Below are positions 3,523 to 59,566 of a DNA stretch of 64,000 nt, one piece after another. Position 1 is the first letter of the stretch; the number at the start of each line of letters is the position of its first letter. The position numbers and the translations under genes were made by a program. Source of the stretch: Hyaloraphidium curvatum SAG 235-1 (taxonomy: Eukaryota > Fungi > Monoblepharomycota); the NCBI GenBank assembly GCA_025558095.1, contig JAIVFI010000032.1:372001-436000 (forward strand). The letters run 5' to 3'. Below the pieces are notes generated by a model. It ran no database searches, was not told the origin of the DNA, and saw nothing but the letters and a program-made list of their open reading frames with translations.

Positions 3523-5031
3523 TCATCCCGGACAGACCGTCTGGAGGGTGAAGCTCACCCCTGCACCCCGGAGTAGCGTCCACATCGCGACCATCACCGT
3601 GACGAAGGTAACGGCGAACCCTCTGACGACCGAGTAGGTCACTTTGAAGCCCACAAAGGTCCCCTGTAGCCCGTCTGTCCTCCCAAAGGCATCCAGCAGC
3701 TCCGCGTGGTCCCGCAGCACGCGCTCCACTGCCGCGGGGGGCCGGTCCGCCGCCGCCACGAGGATCCGGGTGCGGTTTTTGCGGTACAGCTCTGCCACCT
3801 GGTCGATCTGCCCGTTGGCTGCGGCGATGTTAAGCATATCCTGCACCAAGAGCACGGGGATGAGGACCACGAAGGAGAGGATCCAGGCGTTGACGCAGCC
3901 CGCGCCGGCGGCGGTGACGACGCCGCACGCGAGCACAAGGGGAAGGAGTCCAATGGTCGTAGCTCGGCCGGTGGAGAGGTGCTCCAGCTCCGCGGGCCAC
4001 ACCCGCGCGAGGGAAAAGTGCAGCCGCACGTAGGGTTCCCTGGCCGCCGGGGCCGGCAGCTCGCCCGTCCGCGCGCAGGAGGCGAGCCGCGCGAGGGTGT
4101 CGCCGAGCAAGATATCCGCGGCGCGGCGGCGGAGGCGGCCCTGCAAACGGAGCAGAGCGACGCCAGGCGCGCTCCAGAGCCTGCTAAACCTTGAGTGGAG
4201 CACATACACGAACCAGTTGATCAGCCAGGACACCGTGACACACGCTATGGCCCAGGGGGTGGCCCGGAGGAGCGGGCCAAAGGTGAAGACAAGCGTCCAG
4301 ACGACGAAGATCTCGGCGGAGAGCTCGGAGACCAAAGGAGGGATGATGGCCAAGACGCGCAGGACAGCTGCCTGACCGGGCAGTGACCCGCTGCATGGGC
4401 TGCGCGGACACGTGCAAGCCGGGTCGCCGTCCCGGTGGGCGACCAGGGGCGAAGGGTCGGCCAGGAGCTGCCTCCACCGCACGAGGACTGCCATTGGGTG
4501 CCCGTTTACGAAGGGCTGCCAAAGCACGTCCCCACCGGCAAGTAACCCACGGATGCCGTAGACGATGACTCCTCCAGCCAAGAGCGCGATGGCGGCCGTG
4601 TAGACTGCGACATGAAGATGACTGAAGGTGCCCGCGACGTCGTTCAGGATCCAAGTGGGCGGAACCAGCAAGATGTGGCCCACAGCCACGGCCAAGAGGC
4701 GGATTCCCGTCCACTTGGTCAAGCCGATCGTCGCGAGGTGCAGCCGGGTGCCGGCCTGGAGGAACCTGTCGTTGTCCAGGCCGGCCACCAGCGACGCAGC
4801 GTCCAGCTGCTCGGGCGCCGGGCCCGAAGCGCCGCCGTCCTCCAAGTTGCTGTCTGAAAACTGCTGGAGAACCTCCGCCGCGCCGCCCGTGCCAGCCGTG
4901 CCGGCCGGGAAGAGCGCAAGCTCGTCGGCGGGCGAGAGGCGGAGCGGCCCGGCGGGGTCGGGATCGCGGACGGGACGGAGCGGGACCGCCGCCTCGTCGC
5001 TCTCCTTCTCCATGGGTACGTCCTTGTGCAC
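3523..5031 (-). CDS. Uncharacterised 7-TM membrane protein, family copy 1 (candidate OR/GR-like 7TM ion channel)
   Basis: Intronless 502-aa ORF with about 7 hydrophobic segments. Motifs CTCPRSPCSG, AAANGQIDQVAELY and GFKVTYSVVRGFAVTFVT..WTLLRGAGV are shared with the genes at 39631 and 58011. Confidence 0.75.
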   Translation of the reverse strand: MHKDVPMEKESDEAAVPLRPVRDPDPAGPLRLSPADELALFPAGTAGTGGAAEVLQQFSDSNLEDGGASGPAPEQLDAASLVAGLDNDRFLQAGTRLHLATIGLTKWTGIRLLAVAVGHILLVPPTWILNDVAGTFSHLHVAVYTAAIALLAGGVIVYGIRGLLAGGDVLWQPFVNGHPMAVLVRWRQLLADPSPLVAHRDGDPACTCPRSPCSGSLPGQAAVLRVLAIIPPLVSELSAEIFVVWTLVFTFGPLLRATPWAIACVTVSWLINWFVYVLHSRFSRLWSAPGVALLRLQGRLRRRAADILLGDTLARLASCARTGELPAPAAREPYVRLHFSLARVWPAELEHLSTGRATTIGLLPLVLACGVVTAAGAGCVNAWILSFVVLIPVLLVQDMLNIAAANGQIDQVAELYRKNRTRILVAAADRPPAAVERVLRDHAELLDAFGRTDGLQGTFVGFKVTYSVVRGFAVTFVTVMVAMWTLLRGAGVSFTLQTVCPG

Positions 5032-37804: not shown

Positions 37805-39502
37805 ATGGAGTACGTCCGCTTCGGCAACACCGGCCTCACGGTCTCGCGTCTGTGCCTCGGGGTGAGGCTCTCCCTGTCCCCGCCCCCACCCCACCCCAAC
37901 GCGTCCCCCCCTCTCGCGTCTCCCCCCTCGCATCGCACCTCCCCGCCGCTCAAATGGCACGTTCTAACCGCAGATCCACCATTTTGTCAGATGATGTCCT
38001 ACGGCGACCCGCGGTGGGCCGAGTGGGTGCTCCCCGAGGAGCAGAGCCTGGAGATGATCGAGCACGCGTGGTCCAAGGGTGGGCGGACGCTTGCCGCCCT
38101 CGGTTCCACAATTTGCTGACGCTGTTTTGCCCGTTGGACCCGTTGGACGCCAGGGATCAACTTCTGGTAGGTCCAGCCGCCCCCAAATTGTCCCTCCGAC
38201 CGTTCTTGGGACTGTCACCCACTCGTCACCCGGCCCGCAGGGACACGGCCAACGTTTACTCGAATGGCGAAAGCGAGCGCGTCACCGGCCTTGCCCTGCG
38301 GAAGCTCAACATCCCCCGGGAGCGCGTCGTGATCGCGACCAAGGTCCGCCCTGCCGGTCCCCGGTCGACCACCATCTTCTGACCGTTGTTGCCGTTCCGT
38401 GGTACAGGTGTACTCCGCCACCTTTGCCGAGACCATCTCGCGCCGCGCAATGGGCGAGAAGCTCACGGCGCGGGACGACCAGTTCCGCCTCGGGCTGAGC
38501 CGCAAGTCCATCATGTTCGAGGTCGACCAATCCCTCAAGAGGCTGGGGACGGACTACATCGACCTCTAGTGCGTCGTCGCGCGCTTCTTTGCGGGCGCGT
38601 GCGGGAACTGACGGGGCATTCTCCGCCCGCTGCTCACCGTGCCCTCCCGCACCCCCCCGAAGCCAAATCCACCGGTTCGATCCCAACACCCCCGTCGAGG
38701 AAACCATGCTTGCGCTGCACGACCTCGTGCGGTCGGGCAAGGTGCGCTACATCGGGGCGAGCAGCATGTGGGCGTGGCAGCTGAGCAAGATGAACGTGGG
38801 TGGCTCCGCGGGGGCCCCGGGGGGGCCGCGCTGAATGGCCCGGCAGTACACCGCCAAGATGAACGGCTGGACGCCCTTTGTTTCCATGCAGGATTTCTAC
38901 AATCTCGTCGGTGTTTTCGGTGCCCCCTCCGATGCCGCGATCTCACCGCGATCGCCCCCAGCTCTACAGGGAAGAGGAACGCGAGATGATTCCCCTCCTG
39001 CAGGACCAAGGCATGGCCTGCATCCCCTGGTCCCCCCTCGCGCGCGGCGCGCTCACGGGCAAGGGCAACCGCGAGACCGTGCGCACGCGGAGCGACCCGT
39101 TCTACAAGACCCTCGCCAAGGCCGTCGGCGCCGAGGACGAGATCGTCGCGAGGGCGTTCGAGGTGGCGGAGAAGAGGGGGGCGACGGGGGCGCAGGTTGC
39201 CCTGGCGTGGCAGTTCACCAAGCCGTACATCACGAGCCCGATCGGTGGGTTTCCGGCCGGCGGGAGGGGTGCGCCGCGGAGCGAGGAAGCTGACGTCGCG
39301 GCCGGGGCACCAGTGGGAGTGTCCAAGAAGCACCATCTGGACGACCTCGTCGGCGCGGTGAAGCTCAAGCTGACGCCCGAGGAGGTGGCGTACCTGGAGG
39401 AGCCCGTGGGTGGCCTGCGCGACGGATTCCGCGCGCGATGCGGGCTTATCGTTCGGTGGTGCATCGCAGTACCAGCCCAAGCGCGTGCAGGGGCACCTGT
39501 AG
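37805..39502 (+). CDS. Aldo-keto reductase (aryl-alcohol dehydrogenase/YajO-like), about 9 introns
   Basis: [19 protein letters not shown]|MMSYG..|GINFW|[18 protein letters not shown]|..[13 protein letters not shown]|[31 protein letters not shown]|YQPK. Confidence 0.9.
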
Positions 39503-39630
39503 GGTGGATGTGGAGATGGGAAGCTGAACCTGTAGGGATAGCAGAAGTACGGGAGAGACGGAGGGGACCAACGCCCAAAGACGAGCTCCCCCCCTCCCAC
39601 GCAAAACGGCTGCGATCCGCTCGGCCCCGG

Positions 39631-41274
39631 ATGGAGAGCTCCGTCGCCTGTGAGCAGCCCGCGACGCCGTCGCTGTTTTCCGCGGCGGAATGGGCGGCCC
39701 TTTTCCCGGCGCCGCTGCCAGAGCCCGCCGACGCCGCGGACGTCGCCTCGGAGTTGCGCGAGATCGCGGCAAACGCGGCAGCCGACGGCACCGGCGCCCC
39801 GCCGCTCGGCCCCGAGGAGCTGCTGGCCGGCCTCGCGGGAGCCCCTGCCGTGCGCCTGCTCGTACGGCTGGGCGCGTTCCTGGGACGCGTTGTCCTCCCG
39901 CGCTACGGCATCCTGCGGATCGCCCAGCAGGCCTTCACGTTGTTTTTTGTGGCTCTCATATGGATCGAGAACGACGGTCGCTTTGGCACGCGCCAGCTCG
40001 TGGTGGCCACCGTCGCCCATGTCAGGCTGGCCATCTGGGATTTTCGAGTGCTTGGCGGCCATTTCGCGCCATCCGATAAACATGTCTGGCTGCGAGAGGA
40101 AGCAGCGGCCGTTTCGGGCCCGTCTGCAGGTCGACATGCCCTCGCCAGCATAGTCCGGTACCGCGAGCTTGTGCAGAACGGAGGAAGCAAGCTTACAGAG
40201 CACGTTCTGGGAGACTCTCTCTGCACCTGTCCCAGGGCTACGTGCTGCGGCGACATCATCCGATCGGCGCTCGCCTTGTACGTGGCCGCGCCCATCGTAA
40301 ACACCTTGTTGTACTGGGCAGCTTTTGTGGTCCTCTATGTCTGGACTCCCGCTGTTACCTTCGGGTCCGCCACCTGGTCGACGGCGTGGGCCGCCACGCT
40401 CTCGGCTGTGGGAATTGCCGTGATTGCTTTTTTTCTCATCGTGGTTGTGGTGGGCACTCTGGCCAACGCGCGGAATGTGCCCCTCTTTGCGCTGGACACT
40501 CGCATGCGACGCCGAGCTGCAAGCCGATGTCTCGAGGCCCTACTTGTGGAGCTGCGGGAAACTTCCACTCGCCTAGAGGGTGCTTGGAGGCCACGCAAGG
40601 CGGAATGCGAGCCCTACTTTGCCTTGCACGCCGCTCTTGTCGCCACCTGGCAGGCCACCAAGGCGGTCGCAGAAGTCACCCGCGCCGTTGCCGTTACAGG
40701 CATGCTCGCCGAAGCAGTTGGGCTCCTGATTGTCCTCGTAGGTGCGACAGACGGCCGCTTTATTCCTCTTGTAACTTGCCCCTTTTCGTCGCAGATTGGA
40801 TCCTCGTGCATCCCCGCCTACAACCTTGGAGGGCTCCTTCTTACCATCACCGTCGTCTTTGTCAATGATTTGGTCATCCTCGCCGCGGCCAACACCTCCC
40901 CCGACCGCATCGCAGCCCTGTACTGCACCGCCGCACAATCCCTCCGCACCATCGGCATGTCCGCCGTCGCAGACGGGCGCCCGGAGGTCGCCGCCGCCGC
41001 ACAATGGCACGATCGCATCCTCACCGGTTTCGCGGACGTGGATCCGTACCGCGCCCGCGCATTCGGGATCCCCGTCACGTTCGACCTGATCCGGACGATG
41101 GTGGCCACGCTGTTCACCCTCGGTGTCGGGCTTTGGAGTGTTCTGCGCGGGGCTGGGGTGGGGGTGACGATAGATCTGGTTTGTCCGGTGAGTGGTGCTT
41201 TGCTCGTTGCAATGGCCGGGAGTAACCGCCGACGCAGTCTCCGTCATCCGTGGGATGATGGAACAAGTGACTGA
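39631..41274 (+). CDS. Uncharacterised 7-TM membrane protein, family copy 2
   Basis: CTCPRATCCG, AAANTSPDRIAALY and AFGIPVTFDLIRTMVATLFTLGVGLWSVLRGAGV..CP. Probable in-frame intron at ~40738-40794. The 3' end is uncertain. Confidence 0.7.
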   Translation: MESSVACEQPATPSLFSAAEWAALFPAPLPEPADAADVASELREIAANAAADGTGAPPLGPEELLAGLAGAPAVRLLVRLGAFLGRVVLPRYGILRIAQQAFTLFFVALIWIENDGRFGTRQLVVATVAHVRLAIWDFRVLGGHFAPSDKHVWLREEAAAVSGPSAGRHALASIVRYRELVQNGGSKLTEHVLGDSLCTCPRATCCGDIIRSALALYVAAPIVNTLLYWAAFVVLYVWTPAVTFGSATWSTAWAATLSAVGIAVIAFFLIVVVVGTLANARNVPLFALDTRMRRRAASRCLEALLVELRETSTRLEGAWRPRKAECEPYFALHAALVATWQATKAVAEVTRAVAVTGMLAEAVGLLIVLVGATDGRFIPLVTCPFSSQIGSSCIPAYNLGGLLLTITVVFVNDLVILAAANTSPDRIAALYCTAAQSLRTIGMSAVADGRPEVAAAAQWHDRILTGFADVDPYRARAFGIPVTFDLIRTMVATLFTLGVGLWSVLRGAGVGVTIDLVCPVSGALLVAMAGSNRRRSLRHPWDDGTSD

Positions 41275-58010: not shown

Positions 58011-59566
58011 ATGTCGCCGAGGCAGTTCACGGCGCTGGAGTTCGCGGCGGTGCTGCCGGGGTTCACCGCTGCCGAGGAGGAGCGCGGCATCCGCGGCGAG
58101 GGCGGGCTGGCGTTCGAGGCCGTCGAGGCCGCCGCGATGCACCGCTCCGACAGCTTCCACGGGGACGCCGACGGGCCCGCGGAGCTCCCGCTCGAGGCGC
58201 TGGCCGCCTTCCCGTCGCTGCAGCGCGCGACCGCGTTCGACCGCGCGCTGCACCGCAGGGTGTACGCGCGCGCCAAGGTGCCCGGGCTGCCGGCCATGCC
58301 GCTCGGCATCTTCCTCGCCGCCCTCTACGATGCCCTGTTCCTGCCCCTCCTGGCCTCGTCGTTCGCCCTCAACGACGGCACCTACACCGCCGCGCAGCTG
58401 GCAATCGGCTACGCCGCCACCGCCGGCGCCTGGATGTTCACAATGATCTTCTGGAGCGGCACCGTGCTCTACCACCCCGCCGCCCCAGCGGTCTACGCCA
58501 ACGCGCTGACCGGCGTCGCGGCGTGGAAAGAGCTGGCCGACGAGGGCACCTCGCCGCTCGTCGCGCACCAGGAGGGCGGACGGTGCCCGTGCCCCCGCCC
58601 CGCGTGCTCGGGCCGGCTCCCGCATGGGCCGGCGCCATCCGCATCCCCATGGTCGCCTGCATCATGTGCGGACTCTTCTTCGTGACCTACATCCTCGCGT
58701 GCTGGACCCCGCTCGTCGAGTTCGGCGCCCGCCTGTGGACCTCCCCCTGGGCCGCCCTCGCCACCTGCGCGCTGGTCGTCTGGTTCGGGCCGGGGTTCAG
58801 CATCACCATGATGATCAACCCCACCCACGCCCCGCTGATGGAGCTCTCGAACCGCGTGCAGGAGCGCGCCGTGGCGGTCGCCCTGGGCCGCTCCCTCGCG
58901 CGGTTCTCCTCGCGGCTCGAGGACCCGGCCTTCCGCGTGCCGCCCGAGGACAGGGAGGCCGACGTGGTGTTCCACGCCGTGCTCCATTCGCGCCTGGTCA
59001 GGCGGTGGCGCCGGGCCTCGGCCGACCTGCAGTCTTCCAGGGTCTACGCGGCCATGATGGTCGTCTCGTTCGTCTCGGGCGCCGTGGTCTCGGCCGCGGG
59101 GGGGAGCTGCATCCCCCTCTGGATCCTCTTTTCCATCCTGGCCGTGATGGCCTGGATCTTCCTGGACCTCGTGACGATCGCGACCTCCAACGAGGGGCCC
59201 GAGAGGATCGCGCGGAGGTACGTCGAGGCCGGCCTGAGGGCGCGGGAGATGGCGAGCAGGGCCGGGTGCAGGGAGATGGGGCAGCTGGCCGAGGAGCTCA
59301 AGGACTTCCACTGGATCGCGCAGAGCTACGCCGAGGTCGCGCGGACGACGAGGTGCGTTGCCGCTCGCGGGGGGGACGGCCGCCTGGAGCCGAGCTGACG
59401 GGCCGATCCCGACAGGGCCGGCCTGGTCGGGTACCCGATCACCTGGGGCGTCCTGCGCTCCTTTGCCGTGACCTTCCTCACCCTCGTCCTGGGCATGTTC
59501 ACGCTGCTGCGGTCGGCGGGGGTGGCGTTCGTCCCGGGGCAGTTCTGCCGCTCGCCTTCGTCCTAG
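58011..59566 (+). CDS. Uncharacterised 7-TM membrane protein, family copy 3 (one apparent frameshift)
   Basis: CPCPRPACSG, a frame change at ~58620, ATSNEGPERIARRY, an intron at ~59353-59415 and GYPITWGVLRSFAVTFLTLVLGMFTLLRSAGV. Confidence 0.65.

What the first reader, a model, noticed from the sequence alone, without database searches (positions are those of the whole stretch)
3523..5031. Expanded orphan 7-TM family with insect OR/GR-like (7TMIC) architecture: possible fungal chemoreceptor channels
Seen: three dispersed, highly diverged paralogs (3523-5031, 39631-41274, 58011-59566) within 64 kb. They have no signal peptide, about 7 TM segments, long helical loops between TM4-5 and TM6-7, a very short TM5-6 loop, and the best conservation at the C-terminus (G-[FIY]-x-[VI]-T-x-x-x-x-R..T...LRxAGV). 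Known: insect GR/OR channels, plant DUF3537 and chytrid GRL-like proteins have this inverted topology, with a 'G.F.I' TM7a leading into a pore-lining TM7b and conservation concentrated C-terminally. Inference: a large lineage-specific expansion of tetrameric ligand-gated channels. The canonical TYxxxxxQF motif is absent, so this would be a new subfamily.
Basis: inference. Interest (0 to 1): 0.8.

Follow-up and report, generated by a model that had tools for sequence, protein, structure and literature searches.

The report
Huge insect-taste-receptor-like family in a fungus
The flagged gene is one of several hundred very diverged copies, found only in the aquatic fungus Hyaloraphidium curvatum, of a seven-helix membrane protein whose predicted shape matches insect smell and taste receptor channels and nothing else, which would be by far the largest such repertoire known in fungi, although channel activity and any sensory role are still untested.

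Summary
Observation confirmed. The window is Hyaloraphidium curvatum (Monoblepharomycota). Gene 1 is 3523-5013(-), with its ATG at 5013 rather than the GTG at 5031. Gene 2 is 39631-41274(+). Gene 3 is 58011-59566(+), interrupted by a frameshift near 58623 and a 62-nt intron.

They belong to a family with 469 representatives at E<=1e-3 in a 1.84-billion-protein library. All 21 members whose names I looked up are H. curvatum. Median pairwise identity is 27%, and dN/dS of the closest pairs is 0.32-0.44. No Pfam, PDB-sequence or metagenome relative was found.

New features are an invariant H/D/C-x-C/C loop motif, an outer Cys pair and an N-terminal EWLALFP motif. Tetramer formation, channel activity and chemosensory function remain inference. 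Other first readers of this scan noted the same family elsewhere in this genome.

The parts
3523..5013 (-). Gene 1: 496-aa family member (CDS plus stop), the subject of the finding
   Evidence: Open frame. It matches the family HMM at E 1e-157. It matches the public model P0001, DFJ74DRAFT_773035. AlphaFold model has pLDDT 90.3 and pTM 0.88.
4906..4938 (-). Conserved N-terminal motif [FL]-[ST]-x-x-E-W-L-A-L-F-P (residues 26-36; P36 in 99% of 145 members); a possible equivalent of the TM0 re-entrant helix
   Evidence: Seen. It forms a short helix at 28-34 with pLDDT about 87. In one Orco alignment, model 2 is aligned from residue 18, which is this helix. The TM0 assignment is inference.
4642..4704 (-). 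TM1 (residues about 104-124)
   Evidence: Hydropathy of the family alignment; helix 83-127 in the model.
4549..4611 (-). TM2 (residues about 135-155)
4393..4437 (-). Family-invariant H193-x3-D197-x2-C200-x-C202-x4-C207 in the long TM2-TM3 (inner) loop; a candidate metal site
   Evidence: Each of these residues is conserved in 94-100% of 145 members. pLDDT is above 95. The loop is placed inside by the positive-inside rule. Metal binding is inference.
4288..4356 (-). TM3 (residues about 220-242)
4192..4260 (-). TM4, membrane part (residues about 252-274)
3964..4191 (-). Cytoplasmic extensions of TM4 and TM5 (residues 275-350), part of the anchor-domain-like helical bundle. Holds the conserved R293, R297, A298, E326/Y328, L331 and W339.
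   Evidence: Helices 285-316 and 327-371; conservation. Residues 280-460 on their own match four-helix bundles.
3898..3963 (-). TM5, membrane part (residues 351-372)
3829..3897 (-). Four-residue outer turn with the invariant C373, followed by TM6, membrane part (residues 373-395)
   Evidence: C373 is in 100% of members. A strand at 373-375 is paired with 487-489 in the model.
3682..3828 (-). Cytoplasmic extension of TM6 (with the invariant N400) and the TM7a-like helix 427-444
   Evidence: Helices 376-422 and 427-444; N400 is in 100% of members.
3637..3681 (-). Conserved linker R-A-R-F-x-G455-F-x-V458 between TM7a and TM7b. It is longer than the corresponding break in insect receptors.
3565..3636 (-). 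TM7b (residues 460-483), the most conserved helix. It has a small/polar conserved face (G461, T465, V468, T472, V475/G476, S/T479, G483) flanked by R464 and R482. It is the putative pore helix.
   Evidence: Entropy 1.68 bits against about 3 bits for other TMs; helical-face analysis. A pore role is inferred from the 7TMIC fold.
3526..3564 (-). Outer C-terminal tail ending ...V-C494-P-G; C494 is invariant
39631..41274 (+). Gene 2: 547-aa paralog, 31% identical to gene 1. It has a poorly modelled insertion of about 20 aa at the TM5-6 turn and a 28-aa tail beyond the family's usual C-P end.
   Evidence: AlphaFold model has pLDDT 87.6 and pTM 0.87.
58011..58622 (+). Gene 3, first part (N-terminus to the C-x-C...C loop motif), reading frame A
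58625..59353 (+). Gene 3, second part (TM3 to TM7a), in another reading frame. Two bases lie between the last frame-A codon and the first frame-B codon, which means either a frameshifted pseudogene or an assembly indel.
   Evidence: The HMM pieces abut at profile positions 201-205 with no residues lost; sequence read.
59354..59415 (+). Gene 3: 62-nt GT-AG intron, phase 2, just before the exon that encodes the linker and TM7b
   Evidence: profile positions 435 and 438 lie on either side.
59416..59566 (+). Gene 3, last exon (linker, TM7b, tail, stop)

Best explanation
The three ORFs are members of a very large, highly diverged gene family found so far only in Hyaloraphidium curvatum: about 400-470 annotated proteins and about 700 candidate places in a 32-Mb genome. 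The family encodes membrane proteins with the 7TMIC fold of insect odorant and gustatory receptors. That fold has seven TM helices with the N-terminus inside, short outer loops, TM4-6 extended into the cytoplasm where they form an anchor-domain-like bundle with TM7a, and a separate, highly conserved TM7b.

By analogy with solved OR/GR structures, the subunits most likely assemble through the cytoplasmic bundle into tetramers, with TM7b lining a central pore. They would then act as gated ion channels, and the diversified repertoire would detect many different external or internal cues.

Shown here: the family, its size and its restriction to this species; purifying selection; the topology by charge bias; the fold match; and the conservation pattern. 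Inferred: homology rather than convergence, tetramer formation, ion conduction, ligand gating, and a sensory role.
For: Organism and family: the public models are H. curvatum hypothetical proteins. The own-genome search gave 89 matches, with 702 first-look candidates of which only 85 were scored. The profile search found 469 representatives at E<=1e-3, 419 at <=1e-10 and 302 at <=1e-30. Median pairwise identity is 27%.

Selection: dN/dS is 0.32-0.44 for the ten closest pairs. About 4-5 of the 89 matches carry stop codons, and gene 3 is frameshifted, which fits birth-and-death turnover.

Fold: both models are confident (pLDDT 90.3 and 87.6).
- Foldseek. Only GR/OR chains reach probability 0.9-1.0.
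- ESM Atlas shape search. The top six clusters are GR/7tm_7, GUR-4-like and unnamed animal clusters, with TM 0.46-0.55 by query and 0.49-0.62 by target.

Architecture: helices 253-281 plus 285-316, 327-371 and 376-422, then 427-444, a break, and 460-483. Model 2 shows the same pattern.

Topology: K+R totals 34 in the N-tail plus the three long loops, against 2.3 in the four short loops. Loop lengths are 79/79/68 aa inside and 9/9/4/16 aa outside.

Conservation: it is strongest in TM7b and the tail, and in motifs on the cytoplasmic helices. Himmel et al. 2023 describe this pattern for 7TMICs.

Language-model features: four plant DUF3537 clusters appear among the nearest neighbours at 0.93.
Against: No sequence-level link to any known 7TMIC family was found. 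Pfam gave nothing on 37 members. A profile search of PDB sequences gave nothing. The 7tm_7 and DUF3537 HMMs found nothing in the genome, but that search's controls also found nothing, so it is uninformative.

The GR TM7 motif is absent. The outer halves of all seven TMs are more conserved than the inner halves, so there is no sign of a hypervariable extracellular pocket. Conserved Arg at both ends of TM7b makes ion selectivity unpredictable.

Oligomer modelling and electrophysiology were not possible.
Confidence: 0.55

Rival explanations
1. The proteins have the 7TMIC fold and may form channels, but they are not a chemosensory repertoire. The family could serve another diversified task, such as self/non-self or pathogen recognition, membrane or cell-wall homeostasis, organellar ion transport, or metal sensing through the invariant H/C3 loop.
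For: Outside insects, 7TMIC members have varied or unknown roles (PHTF, DUF3537, LITE-1, Nematostella GRL). The outer TM halves are the more conserved ones. An invariant cytoplasmic H/D/C-x-C/C motif has no known counterpart in OR/GR. By background knowledge, H. curvatum is an aflagellate walled cell.
Against: Several hundred paralogs at 27% median identity, with pseudogenes and only moderate constraint, is the pattern typical of environment-facing receptor repertoires. Housekeeping channels are rarely expanded in this way.
Confidence: 0.25
2. This is structural convergence or model bias. It would be an unrelated, lineage-specific 7-TM family that AlphaFold packs like an OR/GR. It would not be homologous to 7TMICs, and it need not be a channel; it could be a transporter, an enzyme or a scaffold.
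Against: All eight 7TMIC representatives, and only they, give full-length matches among 48,161 chains, and this holds for two paralogs that are 31% identical. Foldseek and the ESM Atlas shape search converge independently on GR/OR. Every qualitative criterion is met: 7 TM, N-in, loop asymmetry, long TM4-6 and split TM7. Accepted members such as PHTF score the same.
Confidence: 0.17
3. These are decaying or non-functional ORFs, transposon cargo, or annotation artefacts of a GC-rich genome.
For: In a genome of 65-72% GC, long spurious ORFs are common. Gene 3 is frameshifted. The public models of genes 1 and 2 are inconsistent with the ORFs.
Against: dN/dS is 0.32-0.44. Eleven columns are invariant across 37 paralogs, and 28 positions are at least 85% conserved across 145. 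The models are confident. The copies are about 27% identical, so this is not a recent transposon burst.
Confidence: 0.02
4. It is a G-protein-coupled receptor family of one of the fungal 7-TM receptor classes.
For: It has seven TM helices and belongs to a large family.
Against: The charge bias places the N-terminus inside, the opposite of GPCRs. GPCR chains reach Foldseek probability of only about 0.06 and TM 0.08. No GPCR Pfam family matches.
Confidence: 0.01

Closest known systems
Insect gustatory and odorant receptors (7TMIC Class-A; Pfam 7tm_7 PF08395 and 7tm_6 PF02949; structures Orco 6C70, MhOR5 7LIC, BmGr9 8VC1, Gr43a 8JM9, AgamOR28 8V3D, AaegOR10 8V02)
   Same: The shared features are 7 TM helices, N-in topology, short outer loops, a 4-residue TM5-6 turn, long cytoplasmic extensions of TM4-6, a split TM7 and TM7b as the most conserved helix. 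Both are also large, fast-diverging, single-genome repertoires with pseudogenes. These structures are the only full-length structural matches.
   Different: Structural identity is 7-12% and there is no HMM-level similarity. The TYxxxxxQF motif is missing. The TM7a-7b linker is 15 residues with small beta bridges. The TM2-3 inner loop is 50-80 aa and carries an invariant H/D/C-x-C/C motif. There is an invariant outer Cys pair (C373 and C494) and an N-terminal EWLALFP motif. The host is a fungus, not an animal. Outer TM halves are more conserved than inner halves.
Chytrid GRL1 of Spizellomyces punctatus and S. palustris (Benton et al. 2020, PMC7746228)
   Same: These are fungal (chytrid-grade) proteins assigned to the same superfamily. 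They also keep at most one position of the GR TM7 motif.
   Different: They are single-copy genes that were found by sequence similarity to GRL/DUF3537. The present family has hundreds of copies and was not detectable that way.
PHTF-like Class-B 7TMICs (Benton & Himmel 2023, PMC9998090; Himmel et al. 2023, bioRxiv 10.1101/2023.08.30.555482)
   Different: PHTF proteins are low-copy, and their loop 1 is far longer. No PHTF structure or profile was available to test against, so whether this family is Class A or Class B remains open. The nearest ESM Atlas shape clusters were GR-like, not PHTF.
Plant DUF3537 (PF12056)
   Same: It is a non-animal 7TMIC family. Four DUF3537 clusters are among the nearest neighbours by language-model features, at score 0.93.
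   Different: There is no HMM match. DUF3537 families have 4-12 members per genome, not hundreds.

Membership tests
7TMIC superfamily (criteria of Benton & Himmel 2023 and Himmel et al. 2023) | Seven transmembrane helices | tested here: met
   There are seven hydrophobic segments in the family-averaged hydropathy profile and seven membrane-length helices in two models.
7TMIC superfamily | [quoted passage not shown] | tested here: met
   Positive-inside rule over 145 members: K+R is 7.9+8.7+9.6+7.8 on the proposed inner side against 1.0+0.4+0.06+0.84 on the outer side. There is no signal peptide. DeepTMHMM was not available, and there is no experimental mapping.
7TMIC superfamily | Extracellular loops shorter than intracellular loops | tested here: met
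   Mean loop lengths are 9, 9 and 4 aa plus a 16-aa tail outside, against 79, 79 and 68 aa inside.
7TMIC superfamily | Long TM4, TM5 and TM6 that project into the cytoplasm (anchor domain) | tested here: met
   The model has helices 253-281 plus 285-316, 327-371 (45 aa) and 376-422 (47 aa), with equivalents in model 2. Residues 280-460 alone match four-helix bundles.
7TMIC superfamily | Split TM7: a cytoplasmic TM7a and a membrane TM7b | tested here: met
   Model 1 has helix 427-444, a break at 445-459, and helix 460-483. Model 2 has 451-467 and 484-507. The break is longer than in insect receptors.
7TMIC superfamily | TM-score of at least 0.5 to known members | tested here: inconclusive
   ESM Atlas shape search gives 0.46-0.55 by query and 0.49-0.62 by target. 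Foldseek-derived TM is 0.23-0.45.
7TMIC superfamily | Sequence-profile connection to other 7TMICs (the PSI-BLAST network of Himmel et al.) | tested here: not met
   HMMER searches found no link: Pfam on 37 members and PDB sequences. The only hint is a language-model one, to DUF3537. PSI-BLAST or HHpred against 7TMIC profiles could not be run.
7TMIC superfamily | Tetramer with a central pore lined by TM7b | not testable with these tools
   Only monomers can be predicted here. TM7b has a conserved small/polar face, which is compatible with a pore but is not proof.
Insect/animal GR-GRL family (Pfam 7tm_7) | TM7 motif TYhhhhhQF and a match to the 7tm_7 HMM | tested here: not met
   The TM7b consensus is R-T-x-x-V-T-x-x-T-V-x-V-G-L-W-S-x-L-R-G-x-G-V, with no Y, Q or F at the motif positions. 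There is no Pfam match.
Plant DUF3537 (PF12056) | Match to the DUF3537 HMM | tested here: not met
   (the control was silent, so only one search counts).
PHTF-like Class-B 7TMIC | Structural or profile similarity to PHTF closer than to Class-A members | not testable with these tools

The most novel reading that the evidence does not exclude
Hyaloraphidium curvatum, an aflagellate, walled, planktonic fungus, independently evolved a repertoire of several hundred 7TMIC ligand-gated channels. This would be the largest outside animals. The cell would use it as a chemosensory or molecular-recognition array, and the family's own additions (a cytoplasmic H/C3 metal site and an outer disulfide) would define a new 7TMIC class.
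Probability: 0.3. Interest if true: 0.9.

Novelty: new variant of a known kind. Interest (0 to 1): 0.78.

Why it matters
7TMICs are known as the insect smell and taste receptors. Outside animals and plants they have been reported only as single or few-copy genes: one GRL in two Spizellomyces species, and 4-12 DUF3537 genes per plant genome (PMC7746228).

A family of several hundred members in one fungus has three consequences.

- It would show that explosive, insect-like diversification of this fold happened independently in a unicellular, non-motile organism.
- It offers a microbial system, with mostly intron-poor genes, for testing whether non-animal 7TMICs are ligand-gated channels at all. 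Benton & Himmel 2023 state this as an open question.
- It supplies hundreds of natural sequence variants of the fold, plus new conserved elements (the H/C3 loop, the Cys pair and the N-terminal motif), for structure-function work.

The family also shows that sequence-only screens miss large 7TMIC families. I found no paper that mentions it.

Tried and rejected
- **Pfam.** Scans of the three genes and of 37 members found nothing above noise. The best hit was DUF7692 at E 0.009, below its cut-off.
- **Word-index protein searches.** The search with gene 1 and the search with the alignment were swamped by low-complexity words and returned only 2-3 H. curvatum proteins. A search restricted to the TM7b region of gene 2 returned 8 hits, all H. 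curvatum.
- **PDB sequence profile search.** It gave only a chance TetR-like hit at E 0.33.
- **7tm_7 and DUF3537 HMMs against the genome.** No hits, but the tool's control genomes were also silent, so this is uninformative.
- **Metagenome scans.** The scan with gene 1 found no relative, but that method finds only close relatives.
- **Expression.** Transcription, the two public-model introns and the gene 3 frameshift are therefore unchecked.
- **GPCR, transporter and repeat-protein folds.** Rejected on Foldseek probability of 0.2 or less, TM about 0.1, and partial coverage.
- **Hypervariable outer pocket.** An entropy test looked for one and did not find it; the opposite trend appeared.
- **Tail of the big search.** Only the best 150 of 469 hits are listed, so members outside H. 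curvatum in the tail cannot be excluded.
Full report
**What is there.** The window is GC-rich eukaryotic DNA, 60-76% GC. The ORF at 3523-5031(-) matches a public hypothetical protein of Hyaloraphidium curvatum, P0001 (DFJ74DRAFT_773035). H. curvatum belongs to Fungi, chytridiomyceta, Monoblepharomycota. The window is contig C32:372001-436000 of a 31.9-Mb, 55-contig assembly.

- Gene 1 is a continuous 496-codon frame from the ATG at 5013. The GTG at 5031 is only the mechanical ORF start, and the public model starts at MEKES.
- Gene 2 is 39631-41274(+), 547 codons. Upstream, the same open frame runs on from the C-terminal part of an aldo/keto reductase gene.
- Gene 3 is 58011-59566(+) and lies in three pieces. 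The first two abut at profile positions 201-205 without loss of residues. Two bases lie between the last codon of one frame and the first codon of the next, near 58623-58624. That means either a frameshifted pseudogene or an assembly indel. The last 49 codons follow a 62-nt GT-AG phase-2 intron at 59354-59415.

Genes 1 and 2 are 31% identical over their full length, E 1e-40. Gene 3 is 25-31% identical to either of them.

**Size, spread and selection.** A six-frame search of the assembly with gene 1 gave 89 matches on about 40 contigs. The first look found 702 candidate places, of which only 85 were scored, so 89 is a lower bound. Some copies lie in loose clusters, for example C26:548-562 kb, C12:54-71 kb and C27:83-134 kb. 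Four or five matches carry stop codons.

An exhaustive HMMER profile search of 1.84 billion cluster representatives found 469 proteins at E<=1e-3, 419 at <=1e-10 and 302 at <=1e-30. Every member whose name I could look up (21 in total) is an H. curvatum hypothetical protein in a singleton cluster. Only 57 proteins among 5.8 billion share 5-residue words with the TM7b region of gene 2, and the 8 significant ones are all H. curvatum. A metagenome scan for close relatives of gene 1 found none. Only the best 150 of the 469 hits are listed, so distant members in other organisms cannot be excluded.

Among 145 near-full-length members the median pairwise identity is 27% (5th-95th percentile 22-32%). 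The ten closest pairs among my 37 curated genes give dN/dS of 0.32-0.44 at dS 0.57-1.2. This indicates real but moderate purifying selection. GC3 is 0.73-0.86, so dS is probably underestimated and the true ratio is probably lower.

**Anatomy.** Family-averaged hydropathy shows seven TM segments. Across 145 members the proposed inner side (N-tail and loops 2-3, 4-5 and 6-7) carries 34 Lys+Arg, and the outer side carries 2.3. Inner loops average 79, 79 and 68 residues. Outer loops average 9, 9 and 4 residues, plus a 16-residue tail. This places the N-terminus inside and the C-terminus outside. DeepTMHMM was not available.

Conservation is strongest in the last helix and the tail, at 1.7 bits of entropy against about 3 bits for TM1-6. 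The GR motif TYxxxxxQF is absent. TM7b has one conserved helical face of small and polar residues (G461, T465, V468, T472, V475/G476, S/T479, G483), bracketed by R464 and R482.

Conserved positions on the cytoplasmic helices are R293, R297, A298, E326/Y328, L331, W339, N400 (100%) and L440. I have not seen the following family-specific features described for OR/GR:
- an N-terminal [FL]-[ST]-x-x-E-W-L-A-L-F-P motif, with the Pro in 99% of members;
- H193-x3-D197-x2-C200-x-C202-x4-C207 in the inner TM2-3 loop, each residue in 94-100% of members;
- two 100%-invariant outer cysteines, C373 in the 4-residue TM5-6 turn and C494 two residues from the C-terminus.

In the model, short strands at 373-375 and 487-489 pair with each other. 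Four inner ligand-type residues and two outer cysteines would fit one cytoplasmic metal site and one extracellular disulfide. This is inference, because I could not read the model coordinates.

**Fold.** AlphaFold2 with the paralog alignment gave confident models for gene 1 (pLDDT 90.3, pTM 0.88). With a separate 115-sequence alignment it gave a confident model for gene 2 (pLDDT 87.6, pTM 0.87).

Secondary structure shows what the 7TMIC definition asks for:
- a TM4 continued by a cytoplasmic helix (253-281 plus 285-316);
- a 45-residue TM5 (327-371);
- a 4-residue turn;
- a 47-residue TM6 (376-422);
- a cytoplasmic helix (427-444);
- a break;
- a membrane helix (460-483).

Three different searches converge on one answer.
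- **Foldseek against the PDB.** The top eleven hits for model 1 are all insect GR/OR chains at probability 0.87-1.00 (E 6.5e-3 to 0.07). Unrelated transporters and designed proteins have probability 0.25 or less and TM about 0.1. Model 2 shows the same pattern, with two unrelated transporter or complex-I chains at ranks 4 and 10.
- **ESM Atlas shape search.** The six nearest clusters are arthropod GRs (7tm_7), a nematode GUR-4-like cluster and unnamed cnidarian and arthropod clusters. TM is 0.46-0.55 by query and 0.49-0.62 by target.

A language-model feature search adds a weak, independent hint. Four plant DUF3537 clusters score 0.93, although the query's recognition value is low.

**What is not shown.** There is no sequence-profile link to any known 7TMIC family (two searches were uninformative because the controls were silent). 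Homology against convergence therefore rests on structure alone. Both models come from one method, whose training set probably included Orco.

Tetramer formation, a pore and gating could not be tested.

One test went against a naive transfer of insect-OR logic. The outer halves of all seven TM helices are more conserved than the inner halves (2.4-2.9 against 3.0-3.5 bits; TM7b 1.4 against 2.0). There is therefore no sign of a hypervariable extracellular pocket. Entropy of lipid-facing hydrophobic positions may confound this test.

**Most likely mechanism.** By analogy with solved OR/GR channels (background from Butterwick 2018 and del Marmol 2021, as summarised), subunits would tetramerise through the cytoplasmic TM4-6/TM7a bundle. 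TM7b would line the pore with its conserved Thr/Ser/Gly face. A stimulus sensed within each subunit would open the pore.

My estimates are about 0.85 that the family truly has the 7TMIC fold, about 0.65 that it is homologous to known 7TMICs, and about 0.45 that it forms gated channels. A sensory role is plausible from the repertoire-like evolution, but it is the least supported step.

**Comparison and novelty.** Known fungal 7TMICs are a single GRL in two Spizellomyces species (PMC7746228), plus unspecified chytrid and blastoclad members in Himmel et al. 2023. Neither that preprint (main text and its one held supplementary file) nor any other searchable paper mentions Hyaloraphidium together with gustatory receptors or 7TMICs.

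The family fails the membership tests for GR/GRL (motif and HMM) and for DUF3537 (HMM). It meets all the structural criteria of the 7TMIC superfamily. I therefore file it as a new, highly expanded variant (a candidate new family) of a known kind. Whether it is Class A or Class B is open.

Other first readers of this scan flagged the same family at three other places in this genome (s1-701788, s1-699323, s1-705325). Those are unchecked notes, not independent evidence.

Noticed in passing
window 4488-4550 and 4141-4203 (- strand): The public gene model P0001 (454 aa) removes two in-frame 63-nt GT...AG segments from gene 1. Both segments encode residues that align with all paralogs (H-P-x-A175 and the L-x-L that precedes R293), and both are confident helix in the model. 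They are probably spurious introns. RNA evidence could not be obtained.
   Followed up: partly
window 38878-39630 (+) and 39631-41274 (+): The C-terminal part of an aldo/keto reductase (Pfam PF00248, E 2e-16) runs in the same open frame directly into gene 2. The public model of gene 2 (P0152) is only 304 aa against a 547-codon ORF, so local gene models look unreliable.
   Followed up: partly
window 58617-58630 (+): Gene 3 changes reading frame right after the L-P that follows the C-x-C...C motif. This is either a true pseudogene or an indel in the assembly.
   Followed up: partly
window 40741-40806 and 41188-41271 (+), gene 2 residues about 371-392 and 520-547: Gene 2 has a low-confidence insertion of about 20 residues (pLDDT below 50) at the otherwise 4-residue TM5-6 turn. 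It also has a 28-residue tail beyond the family's invariant C-P end. I did not check whether an intron starts at the Val codon after C-P.
   Followed up: no
P0154 (H. curvatum DFJ74DRAFT_740333, 835 aa; not in the window): In the public model, a family member is followed by a MYND zinc finger (PF01753, residues 492-529). This is either a real C-terminal fusion or two merged genes. P0003 and P0008 (772 and 739 aa) are also over-long models with no extra Pfam domain.
   Followed up: partly
ESM Atlas feature neighbours of gene 1: The second-nearest unnamed cluster (score 0.96, 417 aa) has Nucleocytoviricota as its commonest known phylum. This hints that giant viruses may carry similar 7-TM proteins.
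   Followed up: no
G000 contigs C26:548-562 kb, C12:54-71 kb, C27:83-134 kb, C28:39-49 kb, C22:533-536 kb: Family copies form loose local clusters on several contigs, and at least four copies contain in-frame stop codons. This is consistent with tandem duplication and birth-and-death turnover.
   Followed up: no
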